Part shown: one piece after another, positions 19,206-64,000 of the stretch
Position numbering within the stretch: the stretch's first letter is position 1
Layout: the number at the start of each line of letters is the position of its first letter
IMG/VR virus record: IMGVR_UViG_3300042350_004191
Location: 62,001-126,000 of that record
Strand: one strand, 5' to 3'
Length of the DNA stretch: 64,000 nucleotides
Program-made: the position numbers and the translations under genes
Notes under the pieces: model-generated
What the model saw: the letters and a program-made list of their open reading frames with translations, nothing else
Database searches by the model: none
What the model was told of the DNA's origin: nothing

Positions 19206-22200
19206 ATGAACCCATATAGTGTATCGGCAATAGGCATTTGGCCCAACGAAAAATATCTGTACAAAATAGATCCTTCTATTATTGATTTCAGATATGGCGT
19301 ATTGCCTATGACTGTATTTTCTTCTCCGCAATTATCAGAAGACAATAATTTTGCTGTAATAGACTACAATAAACCGGATTTTAACAGTAATTTAATCGGA
19401 ATAAGTTCGAATGCAGGATATATCTATACTGATAGTGATGGTTTTTTTAAATCTTTCTTAACACCTAATTTGACTTTTTCATGGACTCCTTCGGCATTAA
19501 GAACCGGAAACTATGGAAATATGTTAAATGCTATTTTATTAAATACTAGTGATTGGAAATATTTCACGGTAGTTTCATACCCTTCAGAGTTATTTTTATA
19601 CCCAGTCGAAATATCTAAAATAGATAATGTGGCAAGATATGAAACAGATATAACTTCTTTATCGGTTTATACAATATCCGAGCTATTATCTACCTATTCT
19701 AATATAGAAACCATGAGTTCAGCAGGTTTAACTGCTACCGAACTTCAAACGCCGCTTATTTCGTCTATCAATTATGCTATTAGTTCTTTAAACAGTTTAG
19801 AAACAACTTTAGACATCGTATGGTATAATGCGGTTTCTTCTGGAGAAGTCACTACTAATTTTAAATTTATTAGTTCTGTAACAACAGATTTTTTTGGACA
19901 GTCTTTATCAACATTTTCTTATGTTACATTAGAGAATGTAATATGTTCTTATTATATAAACATAGATAATTTTATTGTAGATTACAATACCATAACTACA
20001 TTAGAAAATTATGTATCTAGTGTAACATTTTTAGATAAAATAACAGCAATAGATTATAAAACTTTTTTTGAAATAGCTACTTCCAGAAGTTATGCTTTAC
20101 AAACTTCTTCTATATTATTAAAACCTTACGATTTTCAATTTCTTTCCAAAAACGAGTACGCCACAACAATAAAAACTAAACACAGTGATTATTTGTCAAG
20201 AATTCCAGAAGCATTACCACTAAATGACAATAATCTCAAAACTATTTCTTATACTTTATCGGGGGCATTAGTTAATTGTAATAAAAGTTTAATAAATTTC
20301 ACAGAAACTAATAATCCTATTTATGGAAACTTTATATTAGAAGACGAAGGCGCAAATATAAGACCAGAAACAGTAAAAATTGCATATAAAATTCATTATG
20401 CAAATATGAACTCAACAAGAGAACCTAAAGAAATAACAAGTTTAGGTGATTTGTATGATGATATGTTTTTAGATTCAGATAGGTCTATCGAATCTTCTTA
20501 TATTGTTAGTAAAAATAATAATAAACTAACATTTCAATTATTACAATCAGCATTGAATTTAATCTTACCATTAGAACACCCAACAAACTGTGTATTGAGT
20601 GCTATTTTAGATTTAGACAAATGTACATTAGAATATGTAAACCAAAGATTTCCCACTTTCAATGCAATATATAATGATTTTACTCCGATATCAGGGTTTC
20701 CCGGCACTGACTTGTCTGTTCGTTACATAGCCGATAGTCCCGTTGATAACCAAAAGAAATCATTAGAAACGACTGTTTTGAACATATCCAGTAATTACGG
20801 AAATTTTTCATTAAATTCAGCAGTATCTTGTAAATCTGACAATCATGTTATTAATTGGACATTAGAATATCCACCATATTATTATAGTTTTAAAAATACA
20901 TTTGTAGACAAAAATAACAGAACATATTCAAATGTAAATTCTTTGGGCTTTTATCTATCTTCAGAAGTATTTTTTAATGAAATAATAAAACCCAACCCTA
21001 ATGATTTCACAGAAGACTATGCAAGAATAGATTTATACACAAGCGTTTATTCCGATTTTGATATTATTCAACTCCCTCTGTCACTATATGCAATTGATGA
21101 TTATATCAAATATGAATTAGTATATAGAGATCAAACTTTATTTTTAAACAACTTGTCAGCATTTTTAGTTTTACAAGAAGACAGAAGCGAAGTTTTGTCG
21201 TTTTCTTCTACTTTAATTCCTAATAGTAATTTTGTACCATATGATATAATCAATTCACCATATGTTCCTGCGGTTTCTGGTGTTTTTCTAAGACTAATTT
21301 ATAACTTAGACAATGGTGGCGCAGTATTTTCTGTTAAACCTTCTTTGTCAACAAAGATCGGTGCATTCGATGCTTTTTGGGGTACTACATTTTCAAGTGG
21401 TATAACATATAAACCAAGAAACTTTGTTAAAAATCCTCCTTTAGACACTATTGCTAAAACTATTACCAGTGCTACATTTTCTGTAGAATCTTTAACAGGT
21501 ATAGATATTTTTGGTCCAGATCTAAGGAATACAAACGTAAGATGGGATTATAAAAGTAATGGATCGAATCATTTAAAATTAATTAATAGAACCAAAGGAG
21601 ATATAGGAATTTTTACAGAAATTGTACCAAACAGTTCTTACCTTTTTAATGTGGCTAATGTCGTAGAACTAACTGGACTGAGTAATGAAACTGTAGATGT
21701 AACTTTTTATTCTGAAGAATATAATGTCAGTTCTACCAGAATAGTCTTGCCAGAATTGTTTGATTTGTATTATGAAAACAGAGTAAACATAAATTTTGAA
21801 CCTATAACCTTAAAAGAAAAAATCAAAATATTAAAATGCGATATAAGTGTGCCATTTTTCGGCAAAAATTTTAATATAACTGGCTCAGAGAGGATAAAAT
21901 GGAATTGGATATATGATAATATTACAAACCCAGATCTAGCTCCAGTAACAGCGTTTTATTTGAATAACAATAATCTAGTAACTTATGATATAGATACTAT
22001 AGGTCTAGCAACACTTAGTACATTATATTTTTATATAGACACAAACTACACAATAGTAGAAGAGTTAAATCCTTTAAGTGCTTTTGTCGAAGTCTATAGT
22101 TTAGGCGAAGTTTATTCTGGTAAAAATGTTTTTGATGTTAATTCATATCCAGATCCAACTATTTTTAGTACAGATTTTTATGTAACATATCCTAACTTTC

Positions 22201-24266
22201 CTTCATATCAATTGATCAATACAGATAGTAATATTAAATCTTTAACAAGACCACCCAACGGAACTAATATATACAACATCACTCCTTTTGAACTTAAAAC
22301 CAGAAATGTTTCAATTAGTGGAATGAATTGGAAAATTAAAAGAACAGTTTTAAATTCGTTTAGCAATACTCTTTCAACAAACGAAGAAGAATTGTCCTTA
22401 ACTCCGAATGCTTCTGGTTTTTATGATGATATTATCTTAAACAGAGATTATAATTTATACAACATAACTTCTAAAAAATATTATAATAATGAAATTTTTA
22501 CAAGTAATTCTCCATTAGTATTTTCGTCCTTACCAATTACTAATATTACTGATCTTTTAAACTTAAGTTCATATTTAATTTTACCAGATTTAATAACCAA
22601 TAATGTTTTTGTAACAAATATAACTGCTACAGAAAATATCTCACCATTAGCTACATCTATAAATTTTATAACAACATCGTATTATATAACATCGTTTGAT
22701 GTTGTAGATAGTATTGATATAGTTAAAAATTTAAACAATCTTTATACATATTCATTTTATACTTCCACCAATTTTATTAATATAAATAATCAACCTGTTG
22801 AATATACTATTTTTAATGTAAACTATTGGTTATCAGCAAATTATACTATAAAAACTGATAAACAAACTGAAATTGATGCTTTTAGTTCTTTGTACATAAA
22901 TCCCAACTTAAATAATTTTCTTTCATATAATTCAGTTATCAATCCAACTACAACAGTCGAATATGATGTTACTAAAAAAGAAATAGAAAAAAATTTATAT
23001 GCAATATATGATATTTCTTTAAATGCCGAAAGTGTTAGTATTCCTAACTGGACAAACTTATACGACTTTTCAAAGTCTGGACAGATTATTGTAGCAACCG
23101 ACACAGAATTTATTACTTTACCAAAATTAATTTTGACACCAAATTTTGTTTGGGTTCCTCAATGGAAATCACCTAATTTTTCTAAATTATCAAATAAGTT
23201 TGTCACTGTACTTTCTGGCTACAATCCCAATAACATTTTTCAGTTTTTGACAGGAAAAACTTATGGAAACAGGAAAGATAATTTTCAAGAATATAATGTG
23301 ATTGTTCAAGATGTTCAAGAATTCAAAATAAACAAATTACAAGATTCTATAACAATATTTTTAGGCGCAGGTTCTAATAATGAATTTATACAAGATCAAA
23401 TAATTGATCGACCAGAAGAATATCGTTTTACTGATAATGGAGAAAAAACTATATTAATTGAAAATTTCAGAATTCCAATAAAACCAGAAATATATAGCAC
23501 TGATGGTATGGTTGTTTATCTAACAGCATATAATAAATTTTTTCCCACTACTGGCGGTTTACAATATTATGGGTTGAATTCATTAACCGCAACAGAATTA
23601 ACACTTTTTAACTATCCTATAACAGCAAGAACTTTAAACAAAGACATAGCTTGGGATAATGAAAAACCAACTGAGTTTGAAATAGACAATTTCTTATTCG
23701 ATGCTGTATATCATAATCCAAAACTTTTTGAGTATGAAAAAGCAAAATTGTTATTCTATCCTAATATTATAAACATTAATTTGGATACTGAAAGATTGAT
23801 TCAAGTCAAACAAATTCTGGAAATAAATCCTTTAGAATCTCCTAATGAGATTGAGGTAGATAAAAGTACAGTTACATATGAATTAAAATCTGATTACTGG
23901 TCTGTTTCATCTGTTGTTCCTGCTGTATCAAATAGATACTTTGATTTGTTTAGATTAACTGTGGGGGATTCTACAATTCCATTAACTGTTTCAAACTTTG
24001 AAAGAAGTACATTATTTTTAAGTGCTACTGCAAATATAGCTACTAAAATACCTCCAATGACTTTTAATAGAACAGCCTCAAGTCAATATACAGGACCAAC
24101 CGATTTATGGAATACAGTATATCAAAAAGCAATAGGAAATGAAGAAACACCGTCTGAACAGTATAAAATCTTATTTTCAGAGGTAAATAGTCTTAGTACT
24201 TCAACCGGAACGGTCAGTACATATAATACACTTGCTATTAATGATAATTTAATTTTGACAACATGA
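19206..24266 (+). CDS. Very large beta-rich virion structural protein (1,686 aa)
   Basis: Long ORF in the baseplate operon, Asn/Ser/Thr/Ile-rich; no family recognised. Confidence 0.6.
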   Translation: MNPYSVSAIGIWPNEKYLYKIDPSIIDFRYGVLPMTVFSSPQLSEDNNFAVIDYNKPDFNSNLIGISSNAGYIYTDSDGFFKSFLTPNLTFSWTPSALRTGNYGNMLNAILLNTSDWKYFTVVSYPSELFLYPVEISKIDNVARYETDITSLSVYTISELLSTYSNIETMSSAGLTATELQTPLISSINYAISSLNSLETTLDIVWYNAVSSGEVTTNFKFISSVTTDFFGQSLSTFSYVTLENVICSYYINIDNFIVDYNTITTLENYVSSVTFLDKITAIDYKTFFEIATSRSYALQTSSILLKPYDFQFLSKNEYATTIKTKHSDYLSRIPEALPLNDNNLKTISYTLSGALVNCNKSLINFTETNNPIYGNFILEDEGANIRPETVKIAYKIHYANMNSTREPKEITSLGDLYDDMFLDSDRSIESSYIVSKNNNKLTFQLLQSALNLILPLEHPTNCVLSAILDLDKCTLEYVNQRFPTFNAIYNDFTPISGFPGTDLSVRYIADSPVDNQKKSLETTVLNISSNYGNFSLNSAVSCKSDNHVINWTLEYPPYYYSFKNTFVDKNNRTYSNVNSLGFYLSSEVFFNEIIKPNPNDFTEDYARIDLYTSVYSDFDIIQLPLSLYAIDDYIKYELVYRDQTLFLNNLSAFLVLQEDRSEVLSFSSTLIPNSNFVPYDIINSPYVPAVSGVFLRLIYNLDNGGAVFSVKPSLSTKIGAFDAFWGTTFSSGITYKPRNFVKNPPLDTIAKTITSATFSVESLTGIDIFGPDLRNTNVRWDYKSNGSNHLKLINRTKGDIGIFTEIVPNSSYLFNVANVVELTGLSNETVDVTFYSEEYNVSSTRIVLPELFDLYYENRVNINFEPITLKEKIKILKCDISVPFFGKNFNITGSERIKWNWIYDNITNPDLAPVTAFYLNNNNLVTYDIDTIGLATLSTLYFYIDTNYTIVEELNPLSAFVEVYSLGEVYSGKNVFDVNSYPDPTIFSTDFYVTYPNFPSYQLINTDSNIKSLTRPPNGTNIYNITPFELKTRNVSISGMNWKIKRTVLNSFSNTLSTNEEELSLTPNASGFYDDIILNRDYNLYNITSKKYYNNEIFTSNSPLVFSSLPITNITDLLNLSSYLILPDLITNNVFVTNITATENISPLATSINFITTSYYITSFDVVDSIDIVKNLNNLYTYSFYTSTNFININNQPVEYTIFNVNYWLSANYTIKTDKQTEIDAFSSLYINPNLNNFLSYNSVINPTTTVEYDVTKKEIEKNLYAIYDISLNAESVSIPNWTNLYDFSKSGQIIVATDTEFITLPKLILTPNFVWVPQWKSPNFSKLSNKFVTVLSGYNPNNIFQFLTGKTYGNRKDNFQEYNVIVQDVQEFKINKLQDSITIFLGAGSNNEFIQDQIIDRPEEYRFTDNGEKTILIENFRIPIKPEIYSTDGMVVYLTAYNKFFPTTGGLQYYGLNSLTATELTLFNYPITARTLNKDIAWDNEKPTEFEIDNFLFDAVYHNPKLFEYEKAKLLFYPNIININLDTERLIQVKQILEINPLESPNEIEVDKSTVTYELKSDYWSVSSVVPAVSNRYFDLFRLTVGDSTIPLTVSNFERSTLFLSATANIATKIPPMTFNRTASSQYTGPTDLWNTVYQKAIGNEETPSEQYKILFSEVNSLSTSTGTVSTYNTLAINDNLILTT

Positions 24267-27136
24267 GCGATTTTTTTCCCATACAAATTAGACACTTAGA
24301 AAGTTTATCAGAACCTATTTGTAGTTCTGATGTTTTTCCTTTACAAATAGGAAATTTAATTGATGGCTTTGAAACCAGAGCATCTAAAATGTCTGATGTT
24401 CTTAGTTATGTAAATTTACAAAATCAAAATACTAATATTTCCAATTTAAATGTTTCAAATTCTGCTGTTGTCAGTAATCTTTTATATATCGGAAACGTAA
24501 ACGAAATAAATGGTGTTAAATTTTACGTAGACGGAAATGCGATTATTAGTGGAACATTAAGTGCTCTTAGTGGTATTACATATTTCAACACAAATATTGC
24601 ACAAACTACTGCTTTGTTTTTATCAGGTGCTTCTGGTGTAGGATTGAAAGTTACGCAAGATTTTGAATTTCCGATTGCTCAATTTTATGATTCTAACAAC
24701 ATAGCTTTGCATGTTGATGGTACGTCTGAACGCGCAGGGAACGTAGGTATTAAAACTGTTGTTCCAAATGAATCTTTAACCGTTATAGGTAATATAAGCT
24801 CTACAGGTACAGTTTTTGGGGAGGGATTGAGTGCCAATACTGGTTACGTTAATTATCTTAGCTCTTACAATTTACATGTAATTGGCAGTGCTATCCTTGA
24901 CTCTGAAACGAATTCTAGCCTTACTATAGGAAATCTAGTATCGTCAAAAACAACAATATACGGTGATGTTTTTATTAACGCAGTAACTGCGGCCAGTTCT
25001 TACAATACATACATAGGAAATGTTAATTCAGATGTTTACGTTAATGGTTATCTTTTTACAAAAAATTTATCATCTGGTGGAAACATTTTTATCAATAATA
25101 TTAATGGCGAAAATTCTCAGTTTAATTTAGGAAATCCTGATGCCGTAAACAATATAACTGGAACTACTATCTTGAGTGGTAATGTTTATATAGATGGTAA
25201 CATTGTTTTAAATGGTGGTGATAATGACAATACTTTTATAAATTCTAACGGTAATAAAGGAAAAGTTTATATAGGAAATCCTGAAAATTCTTCTGAAATA
25301 AATTCTAGTTTATTAACACATAACGCAAATTTAACAAGCGAATTATTTGTTTCAAATTACACTGATTTTGATGCTTTAACCTCTAATATAGATACTTTAT
25401 ATGATGATTTTTCAATTGTTTATTTAGTATCTGCTGTCAATTTATTAAATCCCAGTATAACTAGTGTACAATACAAATACGTTGAAAATGTAGAAGGTTT
25501 AAAAATAGATTTAAATAACAAAAATATTAATTTAGGAAAATCTAATTTTGCTACAAACATAAATGGTAATGTAATAAACTCAAAAGCTGGATTACTTTTA
25601 AATTTATATACTTTATCTGGAGGTCAGGTAAAGATAGGTGATCAAAATAACACTGTAGACTTACGTGGGTTTAATTTAAGAATTAATGATTCTGGTGATG
25701 GTGTTACTAAAAATACTTACATAAACACAGAGTTAGATTCTGGTAACATAGAAATTGGAAATCCTTTAAATTTTACAGGTATTAATGGTTTTAATACACA
25801 TATCAATACTCTTTCCGCTGGTGAAACTGTTATAGGGAATGTCAGTGGAAGTGTTAAAGTATATAACCTTACTATATTAAATTCATTATCATCTTTGGTC
25901 GATACATTTAACGTTTCTAACGTAAATTCTCAAAATATTATTGTATCAAACACATCGAGTCTTAATAATACAAACATAGGTGGAACATTAAATACAACAG
26001 GCGATGCTTTATTTGTAAATCGTGTCGGTGTTGGTGTTCCTCCGCAAGAAAAGCTAACTGTATCAGGGAATATATCTGCTTCTGGTTTTGTATCTGCAAA
26101 TACATTATCTTTAAATAACATTAACCAAAACACTTTGACTGTTACTGGAAACACCTCTAGTTATGGTTCAACAACAATATACAATGAAAGTAATAATCCT
26201 GCCTTAAAAATTACACACACTGGTTCTGGTAATGTATTAGAAATTGAAGACCAAACTGAGGATACAACAATCTTTAGGATTAAAGAAGATGGTAAAATTA
26301 TTGCAGGAACCGCTGCTTTAAGTTCATTGTTTAATGAAGGTCTTTTTAATTTGGTTTCAGATAATAGAGCAATTAATACATATAAATTTGGAAATAATAA
26401 TACATCAGGTTCTTTTTATAATTATAAAACCAGAGGCAATAATGAAAATGAACATGTAATTTTAAATGCTGGTGATTTTACATCAGTTTGGGAAGCTCAT
26501 GTTTCCAATGGTTTAACATATATAGCAAATTCCAGAATAGATGCACGAATCGATCCAAATTATCAAACAACAGCATCATCGATGCCGTCCAGAATTAATT
26601 TTTATACAACCTCACCCAATACAACAAGTAGAGATATAAAGTTTTTGATAGATAGCACCGGAAATGTTGGTATAGGAACAAACGTACAAACAGTAACAGC
26701 CGCTCCTAATGAAAAATTGACTGTTGTTGGTAATATTTCTGCTACAGGTAAAGTTTATTCTGATAACGGAAATTCAGATATATGGAATCAACCAAGCATA
26801 AATTTAGTATTACCTATAACACAAGATGCACAGGTTATATCATCTGGTGATGGTGTTTTTACATTATATTCACCACAAACCTTCAGATTAACCAAAGCCA
26901 AGGTAAGTCTAAATATTCCATCAGAGAATACAGTAACAGCCACATTAAGTTCTATTACAAACAACCAATCTATAACAACCTTAACTTTACCAGCAAATAC
27001 TGGTTTTGTTGCAACAGATTCAAATTTATCTTATTTAATAAACGAAGATGACAGAATTACTTTGAATATAAACAGTGTCGGAACCGGATTTAACGGGGCT
27101 GGTTTAAAGATATATTTAACAGGTCGGTACGTATAA
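24263..27136 (+). CDS. Tail fibre-like protein
   Basis: Three copies of [GN]xVG[IV]...P.E[SK]LTV.GNIS[SA].G plus INxxG-type beta repeats; ATGA-coupled to the upstream gene. Confidence 0.7.
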   Translation: MSDFFPIQIRHLESLSEPICSSDVFPLQIGNLIDGFETRASKMSDVLSYVNLQNQNTNISNLNVSNSAVVSNLLYIGNVNEINGVKFYVDGNAIISGTLSALSGITYFNTNIAQTTALFLSGASGVGLKVTQDFEFPIAQFYDSNNIALHVDGTSERAGNVGIKTVVPNESLTVIGNISSTGTVFGEGLSANTGYVNYLSSYNLHVIGSAILDSETNSSLTIGNLVSSKTTIYGDVFINAVTAASSYNTYIGNVNSDVYVNGYLFTKNLSSGGNIFINNINGENSQFNLGNPDAVNNITGTTILSGNVYIDGNIVLNGGDNDNTFINSNGNKGKVYIGNPENSSEINSSLLTHNANLTSELFVSNYTDFDALTSNIDTLYDDFSIVYLVSAVNLLNPSITSVQYKYVENVEGLKIDLNNKNINLGKSNFATNINGNVINSKAGLLLNLYTLSGGQVKIGDQNNTVDLRGFNLRINDSGDGVTKNTYINTELDSGNIEIGNPLNFTGINGFNTHINTLSAGETVIGNVSGSVKVYNLTILNSLSSLVDTFNVSNVNSQNIIVSNTSSLNNTNIGGTLNTTGDALFVNRVGVGVPPQEKLTVSGNISASGFVSANTLSLNNINQNTLTVTGNTSSYGSTTIYNESNNPALKITHTGSGNVLEIEDQTEDTTIFRIKEDGKIIAGTAALSSLFNEGLFNLVSDNRAINTYKFGNNNTSGSFYNYKTRGNNENEHVILNAGDFTSVWEAHVSNGLTYIANSRIDARIDPNYQTTASSMPSRINFYTTSPNTTSRDIKFLIDSTGNVGIGTNVQTVTAAPNEKLTVVGNISATGKVYSDNGNSDIWNQPSINLVLPITQDAQVISSGDGVFTLYSPQTFRLTKAKVSLNIPSENTVTATLSSITNNQSITTLTLPANTGFVATDSNLSYLINEDDRITLNINSVGTGFNGAGLKIYLTGRYV

Positions 27137-27182: not shown

Positions 27183-29279
27183 ATGGCTACATTAATAACC
27201 AGTTCAGAATCACCAGAACCTAGATTATATATTTCTAGCTATTATGCCATTTTAGGTCAGTCAATTTTTTTCAAATTTGAAACTCCTAAACTTTTTAGAC
27301 AAAACATAATAAAAATTGTTTTAGATACTGGTGAAGAAAACCTATCTGAATCTGAAACTTCTAGATTAACATTAGACTTAGATCCTAACACTCCTATATT
27401 AGATAATTTAACTTACACTTATAAATCTACAGGGAAATATTTTATAAATTACACTGTAACATACCAATCTACAGTTAATAACAAAATTACAACTCAAACT
27501 TTCTTTATAGAAAATCCTATAACCGTTTTAAGAAATTGGCCGAGATTTAGACAACAAGATATAAGAATATTAGGAGAAAACATTCTTCGATTACCTTATA
27601 CTTTCGAACAAATACAGATAAATCCAAATGAATTTGGAACTAGCGGAGTTTATAATGCTTCATTAAGAAGACTGCACGAATGCTTGGAATATTTAAAATC
27701 AAATACTAGCATTTTAAATTCTAAAACTCCTTCTCTGTACTATGGTTGGTTTGGTTTAAATTCACTCGTAACATCAAATGGGTTTAGATGGCATACTCCA
27801 GATTATTTATCTGAATATTATAATAATGTTACCACTGGTTCTCATGGGTTTTCTGATATAAAAGACGTAGCAGAAACTAATAGTTTAATTTTTGTTTTAA
27901 ACAATAAAGATTTATCTATATATGTAAATTCTGAAAGACCTAGTAAATTATTTTTTAGAAACCAAGACGAACTATTAGAGACGTTAACTGACATAACTTC
28001 TTTCGATGTTACTACAGATGGAAGGCGAATGTTTATATTGGACGGTATTCAAAATAAAGTTTATAGGATAGATATAGATTTTGATGCAAATAATAGCATA
28101 TATCAAAGCTACAATCCAATCTTATCACTGACACATAACGTTGGTTCATATGGTGATGAAAGCGATCCTTTTACATTCAATAGTCCTACAAAAGTTTTAT
28201 GTATAAATGGTCTTGTTTATGTATTAGATTTTAATAACAAATGTATTAAAGTATATACTGAAAGATTAGAATGGGTTTATACTTATAATCCACCACAATT
28301 CCAAAATGATCAACCTATATCATTAGCTGTACAAAAAGACACTAATTTTGTTTATGTATTGACCAAAACAAAAGTATATGTTTTACCAAATCGTGTTAAT
28401 AGAGTAAATTCTACTTTTGATATAACAAATTTATCGAATTTGGAGCCTAAGACTATATTTTTTGATGAAGCTGGAGAGTTTTTTTATATTGTAACAAAAG
28501 AAAATGTATTTAAATACACCGCATTAGGTTTATACATGGATGTTTTAGACTTACCAAAAGGTTTTAATAATGAAAATTTAGAATTTATAACAGGAAAATC
28601 TGGAGTTAATAGAAACATTCTTTTAACAACTAAAACAGCAATCATAAAATGTCAAGAAGTAACAGAAATACTAACAACTGGACAAGGTTTAGATGTTGAT
28701 TATTGGTCTTTAAATCAAATTTTAATACAACCTGAAGAATTATCACAAGATTTTGTTATCAACAGAGCAATGTCTAGATTATGTTATAATTTAGTTAACT
28801 TTAGAAATTCTTTAGAGTCTAAACTAACTCTTTCAAGCGAATCAACAATAGCTGGTATCATAGAATATTTTAGACTATATCCTCTAAAAGCAGAATTAAG
28901 ACCAAAATTAGGCAATGACGTAGAAAGTAATAATGTAGCAGTTGGTGTAAATGAACTACACGTTCCTAGTGTTGTAAACCGCGAATTTAAAAAAATATAC
29001 GATGCTCTTTTGGTTATTAAGACTTTTTTGGATATAGAACCAGTACAAACTGAAAGTGAAATAGGTAGAAGTTTGAGTAGATGTCCTAATCTGTTTTGTT
29101 GGTCTTGGAAGGCTATGTCAACTTATGATGTTAAAAAGCCTATAATAAGGACATGTAATATCAATCCAATTACTTTTAGAGAATTGCAAGGCAAATTTTC
29201 AAATACAGATTATGTTCAGACAAAAACATGGGTCGAGGCTAGTAGTGAATGTTGTTACAATGTAAGAACCCCGATATAA
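27183..29279 (+). CDS. NHL/beta-propeller virion protein
   Basis: GSYG...FNSPTKV...VYVLDFNNKCIKVY NHL-like repeats, PKD-like N-terminus, Cys-containing C-terminus. Confidence 0.7.
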   Translation: MATLITSSESPEPRLYISSYYAILGQSIFFKFETPKLFRQNIIKIVLDTGEENLSESETSRLTLDLDPNTPILDNLTYTYKSTGKYFINYTVTYQSTVNNKITTQTFFIENPITVLRNWPRFRQQDIRILGENILRLPYTFEQIQINPNEFGTSGVYNASLRRLHECLEYLKSNTSILNSKTPSLYYGWFGLNSLVTSNGFRWHTPDYLSEYYNNVTTGSHGFSDIKDVAETNSLIFVLNNKDLSIYVNSERPSKLFFRNQDELLETLTDITSFDVTTDGRRMFILDGIQNKVYRIDIDFDANNSIYQSYNPILSLTHNVGSYGDESDPFTFNSPTKVLCINGLVYVLDFNNKCIKVYTERLEWVYTYNPPQFQNDQPISLAVQKDTNFVYVLTKTKVYVLPNRVNRVNSTFDITNLSNLEPKTIFFDEAGEFFYIVTKENVFKYTALGLYMDVLDLPKGFNNENLEFITGKSGVNRNILLTTKTAIIKCQEVTEILTTGQGLDVDYWSLNQILIQPEELSQDFVINRAMSRLCYNLVNFRNSLESKLTLSSESTIAGIIEYFRLYPLKAELRPKLGNDVESNNVAVGVNELHVPSVVNREFKKIYDALLVIKTFLDIEPVQTESEIGRSLSRCPNLFCWSWKAMSTYDVKKPIIRTCNINPITFRELQGKFSNTDYVQTKTWVEASSECCYNVRTPI

Positions 29280-41789: not shown

Positions 41790-43661
41790 ATGAAAAAAGT
41801 AGGGACTGTATTATTAATAACTCGTTATGGTGGTTTGGGTGATCTCATAATGATGCTTCCGACCATCAAGGCTCTAAAAGAAAAACATAATAATTGTAAA
41901 ATAGTTCTTCGAACATACAAGGATTATGAAAATTTCATAAAAGAATCCCCATTAATTGATCAAGTAGTATTAGATGATAATGGCTATAATCTGTTTACTA
42001 CACACGAAGGAGTTTTTTCTTTAAAAGAAGATAACGCTTTTGCAAGTAAAGATCAAAAAGTCATTCATTACAATTTCCAAGGAGTTATAGAAAACCGTAA
42101 AGACGTTCATGGTGTAATTGCGTTTGCAGAACATGCTAAAGTAAATGTTGTTTTTGATGGAAGTTATGAAAAAAACCTTTTGAATTGGTATGATAGAAAT
42201 AGCGAAAGTCCGTCAATTGTGGTTCAATTAAGAAACGTGGGAGATGGGAGAGATTTAACTATAAAGGATTTACCTTACGAAGAACTTTTAAAAAATAATG
42301 CATATTTTATAGATAAAATTATACCAGATAAAGATTATTTGAACCTAATTGCAAATAGTAAAATTTTTGTTGGTACAAATTCTTCAGGTTTACCTATTGC
42401 TGCCGCAACTCATGTGCCTTGTATGTTTATTTTGTTTAATGAAGAATTTCCTCCTTCAATACGAAGTTACAATGGAGTTTATAATTATACAAATACAAAG
42501 GAACTATCCGCCGATTTATCAAAATATCTTTTAAAAGATTGTCATTACAAGAAGATTGGGTTGTCGATGATAGTTAAAAATGAATCCAGAGTCATTAAAA
42601 GATGTTTGGATAGTGTAAAACCATTGGTTGATTATGTTTGTATATCAGATACGGGTTCAACAGATAATACAATCGAAATAATTGAACAATGGTTAAAAGA
42701 AAACAGTATAAAAGGTGAAGTAAATCGAGAAAAATGGGAAAATTTTGCCTCTAATAGAAGTAAATCATTAGAAAATCTCAGAAAACATAAAGACATTGAC
42801 TATACATTGGTTATAGATGCAGATGAGATATTAAAATTTGATGATAATTTCGATTATTTTAAATTTAAAACTAGTTTAACAGCGGATTTATATAATATTA
42901 CTTGTAAATTTGGTAGTATTGAATATGCAAGGACAAATTTATTCAAAAATTCCAAAAATTTTTATTATAAATGTGTTTTACACGAATATCTGGAATGTTA
43001 TGAGCCTATTTTAAGTCGAGACACTGCAAAAGGCGTATATAATATCCCAATTCAAGATTCTGCCCGAAATACAGATGTTCAAAAATATCAAAATGATGCT
43101 AAATTATTAGAGGAAGCATTAAAAACGGAAAAAGATCCTTATTTAATTCAAAGATATACCTTTTATCTTGCTCAATCGTATAAAGATTGTGAGCAAAATG
43201 GTAAAGCGATCTATTGGTATAACAAAAGAGCCGAATTAGGTGGTTGGGATCAAGAAGTATATTGGTCTTTGTATCAGGTAGCTCGATTAAAAGAAATCAT
43301 GGGCTATCCCGAAGATGATATTGTCCAAAGTTATCTTCGTGCTTATGAAAAATGTACTTCCAGAATCGAAGCATTGCATAATGCTATTAAATTTTGCAGA
43401 ACACATGGTAGAGATCATCAAGCATATATGATTGGAAAATATGCCAAATCATTACCAGTTGATAAAACTGGACTATTTGTAGAAACTTGGATGATAGATT
43501 ATGCTTTAGATGATGAATTTTCTATTGCCTGTTATTGGTCAGGTCACTATGCAGAGGGATTAAAGGTTTCTGAAGAATTAATCAACAAAATACCAGAAGA
43601 TCAAAAACCTAGAATACAACAAAATATACAATTCTTTAAAGAAAAATTACTCGTAAAATGA
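41790..43661 (+). CDS. Fusion of GT9-like domain, GT2 glycosyltransferase and TPR repeats
   Basis: N-terminal RYGGLGDLIMMLP and FVGTNSSG; then LSMIVKNE..I.RCL.SV, DTGSTDNT, NF..NR, IDADE, LHEY; then FYLAQSYKD and related TPR helices. Confidence 0.88.
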   Translation: MKKVGTVLLITRYGGLGDLIMMLPTIKALKEKHNNCKIVLRTYKDYENFIKESPLIDQVVLDDNGYNLFTTHEGVFSLKEDNAFASKDQKVIHYNFQGVIENRKDVHGVIAFAEHAKVNVVFDGSYEKNLLNWYDRNSESPSIVVQLRNVGDGRDLTIKDLPYEELLKNNAYFIDKIIPDKDYLNLIANSKIFVGTNSSGLPIAAATHVPCMFILFNEEFPPSIRSYNGVYNYTNTKELSADLSKYLLKDCHYKKIGLSMIVKNESRVIKRCLDSVKPLVDYVCISDTGSTDNTIEIIEQWLKENSIKGEVNREKWENFASNRSKSLENLRKHKDIDYTLVIDADEILKFDDNFDYFKFKTSLTADLYNITCKFGSIEYARTNLFKNSKNFYYKCVLHEYLECYEPILSRDTAKGVYNIPIQDSARNTDVQKYQNDAKLLEEALKTEKDPYLIQRYTFYLAQSYKDCEQNGKAIYWYNKRAELGGWDQEVYWSLYQVARLKEIMGYPEDDIVQSYLRAYEKCTSRIEALHNAIKFCRTHGRDHQAYMIGKYAKSLPVDKTGLFVETWMIDYALDDEFSIACYWSGHYAEGLKVSEELINKIPEDQKPRIQQNIQFFKEKLLVK

Positions 43662-43857: not shown

Positions 43858-45925
<2,068 letters not shown>

Positions 45926-55667: not shown

Positions 55668-56188
55668 GTGGTTTTAATTGTATCAATAAACGATACATTT
55701 AACAATTCGTAAAATGTTTTTTCAATTTGTTCACTAAAAGTTTTTTTTGTTTTTTCTACCAAATTAAAAGTTTTATTATCTAGTCCCAAATATCCTAAAA
55801 CAATATTTGATTCTGTTTCTTTATTAATATTGACAGATAAAAGATTGTCTTCATTTTTTTTAACTACTAAATTAAAATCTTTTGTTATCTTTAAATCTTT
55901 AATATCAGTAATTTTTTTTAATTCTTCATATACTTTAGTTATAAAAATTTGTTTAAAAAACGAATTTCCTTTTAAATTTAAGTTAGGTATCTCCCAACAT
56001 ATATGAATTGTGTCTTCAAAAGAAGGATATTCATTTAAAAAATAAGTCGAGTCATAGCCTATGTTTAAAGGTCCATATGCTATGATAATAACTCCGTTTG
56101 GGTTATATTTTTCTTTATAGAAATCAAAACCAAACTTTTGTTTTAATAATAAACCATCATAATTTATAGGGCCGTTTGTGTGTATCAT
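55664..56188 (-). CDS. DUF366-like protein (degenerate)
   Basis: YDG..L....F......G.II..YGP...IHI.WEIP...LSVNI...LG.LGL resembles the DUF366 pattern. Confidence 0.45.
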   Translation of the reverse strand: MIHTNGPINYDGLLLKQKFGFDFYKEKYNPNGVIIIAYGPLNIGYDSTYFLNEYPSFEDTIHICWEIPNLNLKGNSFFKQIFITKVYEELKKITDIKDLKITKDFNLVVKKNEDNLLSVNINKETESNIVLGYLGLDNKTFNLVEKTKKTFSEQIEKTFYELLNVSFIDTIKTT

Positions 56189-56865
56189 AATTTTTTATAT
56201 TCTTTTTTAAAAATTTCATTACTTTTGTTCCAATTTTCTGAAATCATACTATCTCCCATGCCATGATGAACAGTATATATAGGTAATACTCCTACAGGAA
56301 CTTTATATTTGTTACATTCTAAGCAAAATGCCATATCATAATGATGAAATGCAAATTTTTCATTAAATCTAGCAGGAGTATTTTTAATTTTTTCTACGTT
56401 TACTGCTATGAATAGACCATCTATAATCAAACTTCTACTTTTTGTAGGACCAAAAACCGTTGTCCAAATATGATCATCTTTCTTATGAGACACTTCTCCT
56501 ACCATATCTTCTCTTTTTGTTGCTAGATGCCATGCCAACTTGTCTGAATTTAAATCGCAAGATTTAGTTCCAGCCAAACCAGTCACTACATAAGGAGAAT
56601 TATTTAATTTTTCATATAAAAAGATATCGTTCAATTCAACATCATCATGAACAAATAATAAAATTTTATCAGAAAACTCTTCATGGTTTATAAAAGTATT
56701 GTATACTTCTGAAAGACCTTTCTGATTGTCTTTTGCAATTCTAAAATCAAAATTTTCCACACCATGAAGATTGTGGTGCTTTTCTAGAGATTTAAATATG
56801 GGTCTTTTTTGGAACTCTTCTATTGTTTTAGATAAAGTACATATAACCGCAATAACTTGTTTCAT
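56185..56865 (-). CDS. GT-A (GT2-like) glycosyltransferase
   Basis: GLSEVYN, LFVHDDV (DxD-type), GLAG, IDGLFIAV, FHHYDM.FCL, HHG.G. Confidence 0.85.
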   Translation of the reverse strand: MKQVIAVICTLSKTIEEFQKRPIFKSLEKHHNLHGVENFDFRIAKDNQKGLSEVYNTFINHEEFSDKILLFVHDDVELNDIFLYEKLNNSPYVVTGLAGTKSCDLNSDKLAWHLATKREDMVGEVSHKKDDHIWTTVFGPTKSRSLIIDGLFIAVNVEKIKNTPARFNEKFAFHHYDMAFCLECNKYKVPVGVLPIYTVHHGMGDSMISENWNKSNEIFKKEYKKL

Positions 56866-60729: not shown

Positions 60730-60745
60730 GATAAATATAAATAAT
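60730..60745 (+). promoter_or_regulatory. Tandem late promoter GATAAATATAAATAAT
   Basis: Contains perfect TATAAATA at 60736-60743, 11 nt before the ATG at 60755. Confidence 0.7.
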
Positions 60746-60754
60746 CTATCCAAT

Positions 60755-63700
60755 ATGCAATATATAAGTACCGAAGGTTTATTAATCGATACAGTAAACA
60801 AAGAAGCAAGAATTTTAGGAGTTACTAATACTGTTAGTTCAAATTCTGTTGCTTTTTTAGGAGATAACAATAATACATCTTTTTCTAGTATATCTTTCGG
60901 CGGAACTAGTAATAGCTCTAATAACAATGCTTTAACGGTTGCTGGTTCAAACAACGTTGTGGATGGTTCTTTATCATTTGATAGTACTAGCAGTCAAATA
61001 TCTTCTGATTCAGTTGATTTTAAAAGTATAAACTTAAAATCTCAGGACGGTTCGGTTTCTTTTAAAACAAATTCTAGCAGTTTGACTGCAAGTTTAGGTA
61101 TACAAAGTTCAAACGATGCTATAAACAACAATTCTGCTGCAATTTTAAGTAGGAATAACAATATCAATAACTCTTCTGTTGCAATAAACAGCATTAATAA
61201 CACATTAAATTTAAGTTCTTTTAATGTTTTAACAACCAACAGCAATACAAGAGATAGATCTGCATTGTTTAATTCTCTTTCTACAACAGCATCTCTTTCA
61301 TCTGTTGGTATTTTAGCAAATTTTTCAAATATTCAAAATTCATCTGTTGTATTAAACTCTTTAAGCAGTAATACAAACAACAAATCTATAGAATTTTTAG
61401 GTAATAACAACACAGTTACACAAAATTCTTTAGGAATAAATTCAACAAATACTAATATAAACAACAATTCTGTTAGTATAGGGGGAACCAATAATTTTGT
61501 TTCCGTTAATTCATTAAACATCAATTCTTCAGCATCAAATATTACAAATCAATCAGAAGGATTGTTTTTAGATAGAACCACATTAGATAATAATTCTTTT
61601 AGTATTGGTGGTAGTGGAAATAACATAAGAAATTCTTCGATTGGTATCAATCCTTTAAGTTCTAACATACTTGAAAGCTCAGTAGGAATTTATACTGTAA
61701 GAAATACAGTAAACAATAAATCTTTTGCTGTAAATGCGGACACAACTACGGTCAACCTTAGTTCTTTAGGTATAAATGTATCTGAATCTAATATTAATAA
61801 TCAATCAGAAGGCATTTACTTAAACAAGACTAATGTAAACAATAATTCTATTGCTATAGGAAGTGATAGTATAAATGTTTCAGATCGTTCTTTTGTTTTA
61901 AATACAACAAATTCTAATGTATCTAGCAATTCTTATGGAGCTTTTACTAATAATACCAACCTAAACCTCAGTTCATTTGCGATTGGTGGTTTTAATAATA
62001 CGCTGGCAAACAGATCTTTCGGTATTAATTCAAATACATCCAACATATCTAGTAATTCTGTTGGGATTTATACTACAAATACAAATGTAAACCTTAGTTC
62101 ATTCGCAGTCGGTGGTCGGAATAATACTGTGGTGAATAATTCTTTTGGTTTGAATTCTTTAAATTCAAACATATCTGGTAATTCTGTAGGGATAAATGTA
62201 AATTCATCTAATTTACTATTGAGTTCATTAGGTATAAACTCTTTAAACAGTTCTATAACTTCAGGCTTTGCTCACAATTCAATTAGCGTACAATCCATAA
62301 GCTCTATAGCATTAAACACGACAAATTCTCAATTGAGCAGTTCTGTTATTGTAATAGGTAACAATAATGCAGTGAACAATTCAGTATTGTTTAATGGTAA
62401 TAACAATCTTACACAGGACAATTCGGTTGCGATTTCTTCTAATTCAAACAATCTAAGTGCAAATGCATTTTCTACATTATCAAATACTGTAACAGCAAGA
62501 AGAAATGCTACTGTTTTTAATTCTACAAACAGCGTAGTATCTTCGAATGCAATACAAATAAATGGTATTAATAACAATGTTGATAATAATAGTATTTCTA
62601 TTTTAGGAAGCACAAATACTATAACCTTAACCTCTGTTGGTATTGTTTCTGATGTTAGTAGAATCATTAACAACTCAACAAACATTAACAGTTTAAGAAA
62701 TATTGTTTCTGCAAGATCTGTTTCAATAAACACAGGTTCTACAACTTTGATAGATAAAGGAATTGCAATCGGTTCTTTAAATTCAAACGTATCTACTGGT
62801 TCTATAAGTTTTAATAGTAATAGCGTAATTTTACAATTAAGTGGTATAGATATATCTGGACGCAGTAATACTGTCCAAAATAGATCCACAAATATAAACG
62901 GAAGTAATAACACGGTCCAAAATGACAGTGCTACATTTAATACTATAAACAGTACAGCCTCTGCAAATTCACTAATCTTTGGTGGTGGCTTAAACAGATC
63001 AGTTATCAATTCACTTGTAATGAATTCAAGTGGTAGTAGAGCATCTGATGGTAGTTCTGTCATAGGTGGAAGATCTACTACCGCAAATTTAAGTTCTGCT
63101 GCAATTAATACATTCAATTCTCAAATAAATGGCATTAACTCTTTAGTTTTGGGTGGTAGTGGTCATAATTTTAGATCAGGAAATTCTGTATATTTAGGCG
63201 GTAAAGATAACGAAGCTGCTTCTACATACGGAGGAACTACCATTGGTGATAAATCTATAATTTTAGGTGGTGAAAAGGTTAGAATAGGATCTAATAGTAT
63301 TGCAGTTGGAGGACTAAACAACAATTTACAAAATGGTTCTATTACACTCGGTGGTAGTGGAAATGATACAGCATCTTTCAGTAATGTTGTTATTATAGGA
63401 AGAAACAACGTGACAGCAAACAGGGGTGACATAGTTTATCTTCCTGAAATTAATGCTTTGGGTAACTTAACAATCACAGGTAACGTATCCGCTTCTGGTA
63501 CATTTACAAATGTCAGTACTACCACAGGCACAGTTTCTTCTTTGGAATTAAATAACCTTTTATATCCTTTACATACTCTGGTTGTTAATCAAAACACACA
63601 AGCAGGAAATACTTTTGAAACTGCATTGTTTAGTTTTTACAACAACCCAAGAATGTCTGTTAACAACACTGGCGTTGCAATTAATACATTTGAAAGAACA

Positions 63701-64000
63701 ACCAATCCAAATCAAGCATTAACTGTTAAAGGTAATGTGTCTGCATCTGGAGGAATGAACCTTGAAGGAACATTAAATTTGGGTTTTGATACAAACTTGT
63801 ATCGTTCTGATACCAATGTTCTCAAAACAGATGACAATTTAAATGTTGGAATATTAGCAACAGGAAACACAGACAACGTAATAACACACAGTTCAAATAC
63901 ATTACAACAAAGAAATATAAATCCTAGAGCATGGGATACTACAGCGACTTTCTTGAGTGGTAGTCCAACAGTAAATCGTGTTGTTAAACTCACAAATACA
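60755..64000 (+). CDS. Long Asn/Ser-rich beta-solenoid fibre (14-aa YadA-head-like repeats), 3'-truncated; absent from the ORF track
   Basis: Manual translation from ATG 60755 (MQYISTEGLLIDTVNKEARILG...) stayed open to base 64000 (1,082 codons) wherever checked. Repeats such as NNSVSIGGTNNFVS; C-terminal QALTVKGNVSASG and DTNLYRSDTNVLKTDD fibre motifs. Confidence 0.85.
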   Translation, partial: MQYISTEGLLIDTVNKEARILGVTNTVSSNSVAFLGDNNNTSFSSISFGGTSNSSNNNALTVAGSNNVVDGSLSFDSTSSQISSDSVDFKSINLKSQDGSVSFKTNSSSLTASLGIQSSNDAINNNSAAILSRNNNINNSSVAINSINNTLNLSSFNVLTTNSNTRDRSALFNSLSTTASLSSVGILANFSNIQNSSVVLNSLSSNTNNKSIEFLGNNNTVTQNSLGINSTNTNINNNSVSIGGTNNFVSVNSLNINSSASNITNQSEGLFLDRTTLDNNSFSIGGSGNNIRNSSIGINPLSSNILESSVGIYTVRNTVNNKSFAVNADTTTVNLSSLGINVSESNINNQSEGIYLNKTNVNNNSIAIGSDSINVSDRSFVLNTTNSNVSSNSYGAFTNNTNLNLSSFAIGGFNNTLANRSFGINSNTSNISSNSVGIYTTNTNVNLSSFAVGGRNNTVVNNSFGLNSLNSNISGNSVGINVNSSNLLLSSLGINSLNSSITSGFAHNSISVQSISSIALNTTNSQLSSSVIVIGNNNAVNNSVLFNGNNNLTQDNSVAISSNSNNLSANAFSTLSNTVTARRNATVFNSTNSVVSSNAIQINGINNNVDNNSISILGSTNTITLTSVGIVSDVSRIINNSTNINSLRNIVSARSVSINTGSTTLIDKGIAIGSLNSNVSTGSISFNSNSVILQLSGIDISGRSNTVQNRSTNINGSNNTVQNDSATFNTINSTASANSLIFGGGLNRSVINSLVMNSSGSRASDGSSVIGGRSTTANLSSAAINTFNSQINGINSLVLGGSGHNFRSGNSVYLGGKDNEAASTYGGTTIGDKSIILGGEKVRIGSNSIAVGGLNNNLQNGSITLGGSGNDTASFSNVVIIGRNNVTANRGDIVYLPEINALGNLTITGNVSASGTFTNVSTTTGTVSSLELNNLLYPLHTLVVNQNTQAGNTFETALFSFYNNPRMSVNNTGVAINTFERTTNPNQALTVKGNVSASGGMNLEGTLNLGFDTNLYRSDTNVLKTDDNLNVGILATGNTDNVITHSSNTLQQRNINPRAWDTTATFLSGSPTVNRVVKLTNT

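What the first reader, a model, noticed from the sequence alone, without database searches (positions are those of the whole stretch)
60755..64000. Unannotated giant beta-solenoid of roughly 60 consecutive 14-residue Asn/Ser coils
The ORF track missed this gene because it has no stop in the window. About 870 aa follow a 14-aa period (NS[VFIL].[IL][GN]...N.[VIL]..) resembling YadA-head left-handed beta-roll repeats, but the run is much longer and nearly uncharged. Higher-order duplications are visible: NLSSFA[IV]GG blocks 126 nt apart (61955 and 62081) and AATCAATCAGAAGG 252 nt apart (61547 and 61799), both multiples of 42 nt. The fibre motif shared with 24263..27136 (LTV.GN[IV]SA.G) comes after the solenoid. 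Inference: a rigid trimeric adhesin-like rod of tens of nm with regular Asn/Ser/Thr ladders, perhaps binding a repetitive surface (polysaccharide, S-layer, conceivably ice) or serving as a glycosylation scaffold.
Basis: partly seen in the sequence, partly recalled or inferred. Interest (0 to 1): 0.6.

Follow-up and report, generated by a model that had tools for sequence, protein, structure and literature searches.

The report
Giant phage tail-fibre beta-roll shaft
The flagged stretch is the start of a 2,209-residue tail fibre of an uncultured lake-water jumbo phage; its first ~890 residues form about 60 stacked 14-residue coils, most likely a very long version of the beta-roll of bacterial YadA-type adhesin heads, used as a ~29-nm spacer whose length differs between related phages.

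Summary
Window 60755-64000 (+) is open throughout and continues past the window edge to a 2,209-aa protein. Residues ~27-890 have a strict 14-residue period (autocorrelation z 11-13). There are 34 coils without one indel and ~59-62 coils in all; N+S make up 40% and charged residues 7.8%. Independent lake-water assemblies reproduce the repeats.

It is a tail fibre of a 210.6-kb T4-like myovirus. It has a conserved N-terminal peptide, the solenoid, a conserved junction motif, a distal fibre, and a C-terminal Pfam Collar tip.

AlphaFold2 gives a confident beta-solenoid of 14 residues per coil. The better model (pLDDT 98) superposes on the UspA1 and YadA heads and on the ryegrass antifreeze beta-roll at 1.4-2.5 A. 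An earlier model from a thinner alignment came out as the mirror image, so handedness is not settled.

Profile searches link the repeat remotely to YadA heads. Pfam YadA_head does not match, and the Gly that is invariant in adhesin heads is mostly Asn here.

Among homologues the solenoid spans 11-67 coil-equivalents between conserved ends, which argues for a length-variable spacer. Trimerisation is inferred, not shown. Ice binding and glycosylation have no positive support. I rate it a new variant of a known kind, of moderate interest.

The parts
60736..60743 (+). TATAAATA box (T4 late-promoter consensus) 11 nt upstream of the start codon; no Shine-Dalgarno motif follows it
   Evidence: Genome-wide the box lies within 45 nt upstream of 8 of 177 long ORFs, against about 0.5 expected. 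Its promoter role is inferred.
60755..64000 (+). First 1,082 codons of the 2,209-codon tail-fibre gene; it continues to the equivalent of window position 67384 (L003:2755-9384)
   Evidence: Third-codon-position bias of natural variants.
60755..60832 (+). Conserved N-terminal peptide (residues 1-26, MQYI..EGLLIDT...), presumed virion-attachment element
   Evidence: Residues M1 Q2 Y3 I4 E7 G8 L9 L10 I11 D12 T13 are invariant in 6 homologues with different C-termini. The peptide is also present in P0012-14 and P0070. The attachment role is inferred.
60833..63433 (+). Beta-solenoid shaft: about 59-62 coils of 14 residues (residues 27-893), consensus x-[NS]-S-phi-[GAS]-phi-[NG/aromatic]-x-x-x-[SNT]-[NTS]-phi-x
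   Evidence: AlphaFold2 models have pLDDT 88 and 98, with strands recurring every 14 residues.
60833..62260 (+). Block of 34 coils in perfect register with no indel (residues 27-502)
61421..62260 (+). Region with a 42-residue (three-coil) super-repeat. Position 7 cycles through aromatic or other, then G, then N. It includes the 126-nt tandem array at 61901-62193.
63434..63499 (+). Conserved junction motif closing the solenoid (VYLPEINALGNLTITGNVSASG, residues 894-915)
   Evidence: Found in 10 of 14 family members at variable distance from the N-terminus
63500..64000 (+). Start of the distal fibre (non-solenoid), with the second copy of the fibre motif at 63719. Beyond the window lie 63-residue repeats, four more copies of the motif and the Collar tip (residues 2038-2100).

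Best explanation
The stretch encodes the proximal shaft of a 2,209-residue receptor-recognising tail fibre of an uncultured 210.6-kb T4-like myovirus from lake water.

A short conserved N-terminal peptide presumably fixes the fibre to the virion. About 60 coils of 14 residues then stack into a narrow two-sheet beta-solenoid about 28-30 nm long. [quoted passage not shown] By analogy with those heads and with other phage fibres, three chains would pack side by side, with the small residues of the inner strand (Ser3, Gly/Ala/Ser5) facing the threefold axis.

A conserved junction motif joins the shaft to a distal fibre that ends in a tail-collar domain, and that tip binds the host surface.

The solenoid works as a rigid spacer. 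Its length changes by gain and loss of whole coils, which sets how far the tip reaches.

Shown: the gene, the repeats, the solenoid prediction, the fibre identity, and the length variation.
Inferred: handedness, trimer, virion attachment, and the spacer function.
For: - Gene and repeats.
- Fibre identity: Pfam Collar at E 1.2e-08, 35.3 bits against a cut-off of 24. PHROG tail-fibre families reach E 2.8e-26 on residues 1500-2209. The tip is 36-39% identical to the side tail fibre tips of HK97 and HK106.
- Phage context: baseplate wedge, sheath stabiliser, helicase, primase and endolysin; a viral record of 210,586 bp, 99% complete.
- Solenoid: AlphaFold2 pLDDT 88.3 for residues 1-420 and 98.0 (pTM 0.89) for residues 251-390.
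- YadA-type beta-roll, by sequence: the repeat profile hits only 1p9h among 177,635 PDB sequences, at E 0.023. hhalign against adhesin head repeats gives 97.1%, E 6.6e-11, over 135 gap-free columns. YadA_head is the commonest Pfam family among distant hits, 10 of 49.
- Spacer: indels between homologues come in blocks of about 14 residues. The distance from the N-terminal peptide to the junction is 11, 33, 33, 35, 39, 41, 44, 52, 62 and 67 coil-equivalents in ten family members.
- Tip exchange: C-termini differ (Collar, Peptidase_S74, RCC1, others) while the N-terminus, the junction and the flanking genes are conserved.
- Real in nature.
Against: - Pfam YadA_head does not match the protein or its segments, even at E up to 10. 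phmmer against PDB finds no adhesin.
- The Gly that is invariant at the end of the inner strand of adhesin heads is Gly in only 8 of 45 scored coils; it is Asn in 19, with Leu, Phe and Tyr also present.
- The first AlphaFold2 model (6-row alignment) behaves as a right-handed helix. It fits TibA at 2.0 A over 182 residues and other right-handed helices at 3-5 A, but every left-handed structure at 7.7-12 A. Handedness therefore depends on the alignment used.
- The distant-hit E-values are inflated by periodicity: many hits are unrelated tandem repeats of period 7, 14 or 21. The adhesin set used for hhalign was drawn from those hits.
- The trimer prediction gave no verdict.
- There is no proteomic or imaging evidence that the protein is in the virion.
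Confidence: 0.7

Rival explanations
1. The solenoid is a single-chain right-handed beta-helix of only 14 residues per coil, a narrow relative of autotransporter passenger helices such as TibA and Ag43. It would be unrelated in fold to YadA heads, and the NS-phi-x-phi motif would be convergent.
For: The first AlphaFold2 model (pLDDT 88, above 95 for residues 220-400) superposes on TibA at 2.0 A over 182 residues. It fits Ag43b, Vag8, tailspikes and MpAFP at 3-5 A, and all left-handed structures at 7.7-12 A. Foldseek's best matches for it are Ag43 chains.
Against: The more confident model from a deeper, in-register alignment is the mirror image. All sequence-profile links go to left-handed beta-rolls. 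TibA and Ag43 coils have about 19 residues and three strands, not 14 and two.
Confidence: 0.17
2. The solenoid is itself the adhesive part. Like YadA, UspA1 or CbpF heads, its long Asn/Ser/Thr surface would bind a repetitive host polysaccharide, capsule or S-layer, giving reversible first contact before the tip engages.
For: The closest structural relatives are ligand-binding adhesin heads. The surface is polar, nearly uncharged and periodic. Many phage fibres carry more than one binding site (general knowledge).
Against: The coil number varies sixfold, and coil sequences diverge to 30-50% identity among relatives, while the ends stay conserved. A dedicated and exchangeable C-terminal receptor-binding module exists. 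No binding data exist.
Confidence: 0.15
3. The rod is an ice-binding surface related to the grass antifreeze beta-roll, or else a scaffold for N-glycosylation at its many N-x-S sites.
Against: Pfam LbR_Ice_bind does not match the protein itself, and the distant hits are inflated by periodicity. Sequons number 62 against 50.5 +/- 5.5 expected from composition, and the Ser of N-x-S is the core-conserved Ser3 of the coil, so the motif is structural. There is no evidence of a cold habitat. A shared fold shows no function.
Confidence: 0.06

Closest known systems
YadA-like head (Ylhead, Hep_Hag; Pfam PF05658) of trimeric autotransporter adhesins: YadA 1p9h, UspA1 3pr7, BpaC 7o23, BoaA 3s6l, CbpF 9gh4
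   Same: Both have a 14-residue coil and an inner strand of alternating small and large residues (S-V-A-I-G in adhesins, S-phi-[GAS]-phi-[N/G] here; PMC2373917). The second model superposes one-to-one at 1.4-2.8 A. There is a remote profile link.
   Different: There is no Pfam match. The invariant Gly is mostly Asn here. The run is about 60 uninterrupted coils. Composition is 40% Asn+Ser, not Ala/Gly-rich. It has no signal peptide, neck, stalk or membrane anchor, and instead sits at the N-terminus of a phage fibre. It has a three-coil super-repeat. Handedness and trimer are unproven.
Phage tail fibres annotated with a YadA-like domain: the pelagiphage fibre in PMC3909814, and the BFVD entries 'YadA-like protein' and 'Hep_Hag family structural protein'
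   Same: Both are phage fibres that use the adhesin-head beta-roll.
   Different: In the pelagiphage the domain is short, C-terminal and regarded as the variable binding part. Here it is the long, proximal, length-variable shaft, and it escapes the domain models.
Collar-tipped phage fibres (Pfam PF07484: HK97 and HK106 side tail fibres; PHROG 523 'tail collar fiber protein')
   Same: The C-terminal 180 residues are 36-39% identical to HK97/HK106-type tips, and the Collar domain scores above its cut-off.
   Different: Only the last 8% of the protein matches any cultured phage. No record in the phage collection holds the solenoid.
Ryegrass (Lolium perenne) ice-binding protein, a left-handed beta-roll (3ult; Pfam PF21300)
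   Same: It is a beta-roll of 14-15 residues per coil. The fit is rmsd 1.4 A over 106 residues.
   Different: It is a monomer of 8 coils with an xxNxVxG half-repeat. There is no direct Pfam match here, and no evidence of ice binding.

Membership tests
YadA-like head repeat (Pfam PF05658 YadA_head / Ylhead) | Match to the family's profile HMM | tested here: not met
   No hit for the whole protein or for six segments at E up to 10. There is only a remote link through my own repeat profile: 1p9h at E 0.023 and hhalign at 97%.
YadA-like head repeat (Pfam PF05658 YadA_head / Ylhead) | [quoted passage not shown] | tested here: met
   Among the 34 in-register coils, position 3 is Ser in 29, position 4 is F/V/L/I in 23, position 5 is G/A/S in 25, and position 6 is I/L/V/F in 30. 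The period of 14 has z 11.3.
YadA-like head repeat (Pfam PF05658 YadA_head / Ylhead) | Invariant glycine ending the inner strand (PMC2373917) | tested here: not met
   Across 45 scored coils position 7 is N 19, G 8, L 7, F 4, Y 3, S 3, Q 1. In true adhesin head segments the Gly columns are invariant.
YadA-like head repeat (Pfam PF05658 YadA_head / Ylhead) | Left-handed parallel beta-roll fold | tested here: inconclusive
   The model from the 24-row alignment fits left-handed rolls at 1.4-2.8 A. The model from the 6-row alignment fits right-handed helices at 2-5 A and left-handed ones at 7.7-12 A. No coordinates were available to measure handedness directly.
YadA-like head repeat (Pfam PF05658 YadA_head / Ylhead) | Obligate trimer of three rolls | tested here: inconclusive
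   A three-copy job on residues 167-418 scored 0.00, no verdict.
Trimeric autotransporter adhesin (whole protein) | Extended signal peptide, neck and stalk, and a C-terminal YadA_anchor beta-barrel | tested here: not met
   The only Pfam hit is Collar at the C-terminus. The N-terminus is a conserved phage-family peptide. The gene lies in a viral genome.
Phage tail fibre with tail-collar tip (Pfam PF07484) | Collar domain above the curated cut-off, tail-fibre family matches, and location in a tailed-phage genome | tested here: met
   Collar scores 35.3 bits against a cut-off of 24. PHROG tail-fibre families reach E 2.8e-26. Myovirus genes surround it.
Phage tail fibre with tail-collar tip (Pfam PF07484) | Presence in the virion and a role in adsorption | not testable with these tools
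   The phage is uncultured, so there is no proteome or host.
Grass antifreeze beta-roll (Pfam PF21300 LbR_Ice_bind) | Match to the family HMM, and ice-binding activity | tested here: not met
   No direct Pfam hit. The evidence is only fold similarity to 3ult and the family's presence among periodicity-inflated distant hits. Activity is not testable here.

The most novel reading that the evidence does not exclude
The solvent-exposed ladder of Asn, Ser and Thr along the ~29-nm rod is a working binding face in its own right, for ice or for a periodic surface glycan. That would make this lake-phage fibre the first viral counterpart of the grass antifreeze beta-roll and of adhesin heads, rather than a passive spacer.
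Probability: 0.07. Interest if true: 0.8.

Novelty: new variant of a known kind. Interest (0 to 1): 0.42.

Why it matters
Phage tail fibres set host range, and their shafts are usually built from interdigitated trimeric folds that domain libraries describe poorly. Here a small family of uncultured freshwater jumbo phages appears to use the adhesin-head beta-roll as the shaft itself. In this family:
- the shaft reaches about 60 uninterrupted coils;
- Asn takes the place of the adhesins' invariant Gly;
- the coil number ranges from about 11 to 67 between two conserved end motifs.

That gives a natural series for testing how fibre reach affects adsorption. It is also a simple, nearly uncharged, modular rod that could serve as a protein-engineering scaffold. 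It is a reminder that current Pfam models miss this repeat.

The case also shows that AlphaFold2 can return either mirror form of a short-coil solenoid with high confidence, depending on the alignment it is given.

Tried and rejected
- Trimer prediction: three copies of residues 167-418 scored 0.00, no verdict. I do not use it for or against binding.
- Direct family and PDB sequence searches of the solenoid found nothing meaningful. The only hit was a chance lectin match at E 0.34.
- PHROGs on residues 1-900 and 900-1500 found nothing.
- Alignment A2 of overlapping 140-residue windows was discarded, because MAFFT staggered the rows instead of stacking them. It was replaced by A3.
- The exhaustive profile search found 140 representatives at E <= 1e-3, but only 8 close relatives. 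The rest mix true YadA heads with unrelated tandem repeats, so I do not use their E-values as proof of homology.
- No model coordinates reach the script box, so handedness had to be read from rmsd patterns.
- Host search: there are no relatives in the species-representative bacterial and archaeal genomes, no tRNA genes in the window, and only the Collar tip matches cultured phages.
- Glycosylation idea: sequon excess is weak, about 2 sd.
- The opposite-strand ORF 62329-63117 is rejected as a shadow of the repeat. Natural variants fall on codon position 3 of the + frame.
Only table 11 was used. Read laying was given 3,501 letters.
Full report
**1. The observation**

The frame starting at window 60755 has no stop up to 64000. 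The window is positions 62001-126000 of a 210,586-bp viral record rated 99% complete. In that record the frame runs on to a stop at the equivalent of window position 67384 (L003:2755-9384), giving a protein of 2,209 residues, P0002.

Identity autocorrelation over residues 1-900 peaks only at multiples of 14: z is 11.3 at lag 14, 11.2 at 28 and 12.7 at 42. No other lag exceeds z 2.2. Printed in rows of 14, residues 27-502 are 34 coils with no indel. A position-matrix parse gives 59 coils over residues 15-859, with three small register breaks.

The consensus coil is x-[NS]-S-phi-[GAS]-phi-[N/G/aromatic]-x-x-x-[SNT]-[NTS]-phi-x. Ser plus Asn make up 40% of residues. Charged residues are 7.8%, with equal numbers of acidic and basic residues.

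A three-coil (42-residue, 126-nt) super-repeat dominates residues 200-560. The 126-nt pair has the right spacing but lies 9 nt further along than stated.

**2. It is real**

Seven sequencing runs from seven studies, almost all labelled lake water, hold at least half of the sampled words of this stretch. Contigs from two independent runs match without a difference. A strain about 5% divergent spans 2.2 kb with 106 substitutions and no gap. Of the 22 listed substitutions inside the gene, 16 fall on the third codon position of this frame. The repeats are therefore not an assembly artefact, and the frame is under coding constraint.

**3. What the protein is**

The C-terminus carries the Pfam phage tail-collar domain (residues 2038-2100, E 1.2e-08, above the cut-off). 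Residues 1500-2209 match a dozen PHROG tail-fibre families, down to E 2.8e-26. The last 180 residues are 36-39% identical to the tips of the HK97 and HK106 side tail fibres.

The surrounding genes are those of a T4-like myovirus: baseplate wedge, sheath stabiliser, helicase and primase, with an endolysin downstream. A TATAAATA box, the T4 late-promoter consensus, sits 11 nt before the start codon. Across the genome this box is enriched just upstream of long ORFs, at 8 of 177 against about 0.5 expected.

No other gene in the genome carries the repeat.

**4. The family**

A word search and an exhaustive profile search found only about a dozen close relatives among billions of proteins. All are 1,179-2,608 residues long and come from metagenomes.

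They share the N-terminal peptide MQYI..EGLLIDT, with 11 invariant residues among the first 13, and the 14-residue repeats. Most also share a junction motif, VYLPEI.A.GNLTI.GN[IV][ST]A.G, which ends the solenoid.

Their C-termini differ: Collar here, and Peptidase_S74, RCC1 or unknown modules elsewhere. Similarity to the two nearest relatives ends at residues 1282 and about 1939.

In a related 187-kb contig the flanking genes are the same. The distance from the N-terminal peptide to the junction is 11, 33, 33, 35, 39, 41, 44, 52, 62 (this protein) and 67 coil-equivalents. Gaps in the alignments come in blocks of about 14 residues.

This is the pattern of a modular fibre: a conserved attachment end, an exchangeable tip, and a shaft whose length changes by whole coils.

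No relative was found in the species-representative bacterial and archaeal genomes. No cultured phage holds the solenoid.

**5. The fold**

AlphaFold2 on residues 1-420, using six homologues, gave pLDDT 88.3, above 95 for residues 220-400, with strands recurring every 14 residues.

I then built a 24-row, in-register alignment of non-overlapping ten-coil windows (A3) and folded residues 251-390. The result had pLDDT 98.0 and pTM 0.89, and the rmsd pattern reversed:
- CbpF, BoaA, AtaA, EibD and BpaC: 1.9-2.8 A.
- Hexapeptide-repeat enzymes: about 2.0 A.
- Right-handed Ag43b, MpAFP, EtpA and Vag8: 8.5-8.7 A.

Foldseek likewise switched from Ag43 to left-handed GlmU and LpxD.

The solenoid with 14 residues per coil is therefore a robust prediction, but its handedness depends on the alignment. 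No coordinates were available to me.

I favour the left-handed form. It comes from the deeper alignment with the higher confidence, and all sequence evidence points the same way (section 6).

**6. Relation to YadA heads**

Pfam YadA_head does not match the protein or its parts.

The A3 profile has a single hit among 177,635 PDB sequences, the YadA head 1p9h. The hit is in register, at E 0.023.

Among the 49 best distant hits of the exhaustive search, taken in rank order, the commonest Pfam families are YadA_head (10) and the grass antifreeze beta-roll LbR_Ice_bind (9). These are the two known families of left-handed rolls with 14-15 residues per coil. Many other hits are unrelated tandem repeats of period 7, 14 or 21, so the E-values are inflated.

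hhalign of A3 against head segments of eight of those adhesins gives 97.1% probability and E 6.6e-11 over 135 gap-free columns. That set was chosen from hits of my own profile, which makes the test partly circular.

The inner-strand pattern of alternating small and large residues is the one that defines adhesin heads (PMC2373917). The Gly that ends the strand is invariant in adhesins but is Gly in only 8 of 45 coils here, and Asn in 19.

I therefore say that the shaft works like a YadA-type roll and is remotely similar to it, but I do not file it as a member of the Pfam family.

**7. Function**

The best reading is a rigid spacer of about 28-30 nm (59-62 coils at about 0.48 nm each) between the virion-attachment peptide and the distal fibre with its receptor-binding tip.

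Trimerisation is inferred. Collar-tipped and other phage fibres are trimers (general knowledge). The small residues conserved on one face of the inner strand are the ones that face the threefold axis in adhesin heads. The one trimer job gave no verdict.

The other readings are:
- A binding role for the rod itself is possible. The sixfold length variation and the presence of an exchangeable tip argue against it.
- The glycosylation idea has weak support. There are 62 sequons against 50.5 +/- 5.5 expected, and the Ser of N-x-S is the conserved core Ser of the coil. The phage does encode two glycosyltransferases.
- The ice idea rests only on fold likeness to the ryegrass protein and on the lake habitat.

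**8. Novelty**

Phage fibres with a YadA-like domain are on record: a pelagiphage fibre with a short C-terminal domain (PMC3909814), and viral entries named YadA-like or Hep_Hag.

What is new here:
- the beta-roll is used as the proximal shaft;
- it runs for about 60 uninterrupted coils;
- it is Asn/Ser-rich, with Asn in place of the invariant Gly;
- it has a three-coil super-repeat;
- its length varies between conserved ends;
- it escapes the current domain models.

I rate it a new variant of a known kind, of moderate interest.

Noticed in passing
window 14941-19176, 19206-24266, 27183-29279 (+): Three very large ORFs (1,411, 1,686 and 698 aa) lie next to the baseplate wedge gene with no Pfam or PHROG match at all. 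They are probably further baseplate or fibre proteins of unknown fold.
   Followed up: partly
window 24263-27136 (+): This 957-aa ORF carries three copies of the fibre motif (P.E.LTV.GNIS[AS]) and 31-54% local identity to the distal part of the giant fibre. It has no family match and is probably a second fibre built from the same distal modules.
   Followed up: partly
window 43858-45921 (-): A 687-aa collagen-like tail fibre protein with strong matches to many PHROG tail-fibre families.
   Followed up: no
window 41790-43661 (+) and 56185-56865 (-): Two glycosyltransferase genes: a beta-1,4-glycosyltransferase PHROG match and Pfam Glyco_tranf_2_5. The second is conserved upstream of the fibre gene in a related phage. 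Their targets are unknown.
   Followed up: no
whole genome (G000): The genome almost lacks Shine-Dalgarno motifs: 17 of 177 long ORFs have one, against 7% in random sequence. With 32% GC and a lake-water origin, this may point to a Bacteroidota host.
   Followed up: partly
whole genome; window 60736-60743: TATAAATA, the T4 late-promoter consensus, lies within 45 nt upstream of 8 of 177 long ORFs, against about 0.5 expected. In the window as a whole the motif is not more frequent than chance.
   Followed up: partly
models of P0002:1-420 and P0002:251-390: AlphaFold2 returned mirror-image solenoids for the same repeats with high confidence in both runs, depending on whether a 6-row or a 24-row alignment was supplied.
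   Followed up: yes
L003:10858-11568 (+), beyond the window: An endolysin (PG_binding_1 plus Peptidase_M15_4 in the relative) lies four small genes downstream of the fibre gene, in conserved order in the related contig L008.
   Followed up: no
L004 (IMG/VR contig of 55,645 bp): A second viral contig carries the first 420 residues of the fibre at 100% identity, so the same phage was assembled at least twice.
   Followed up: no
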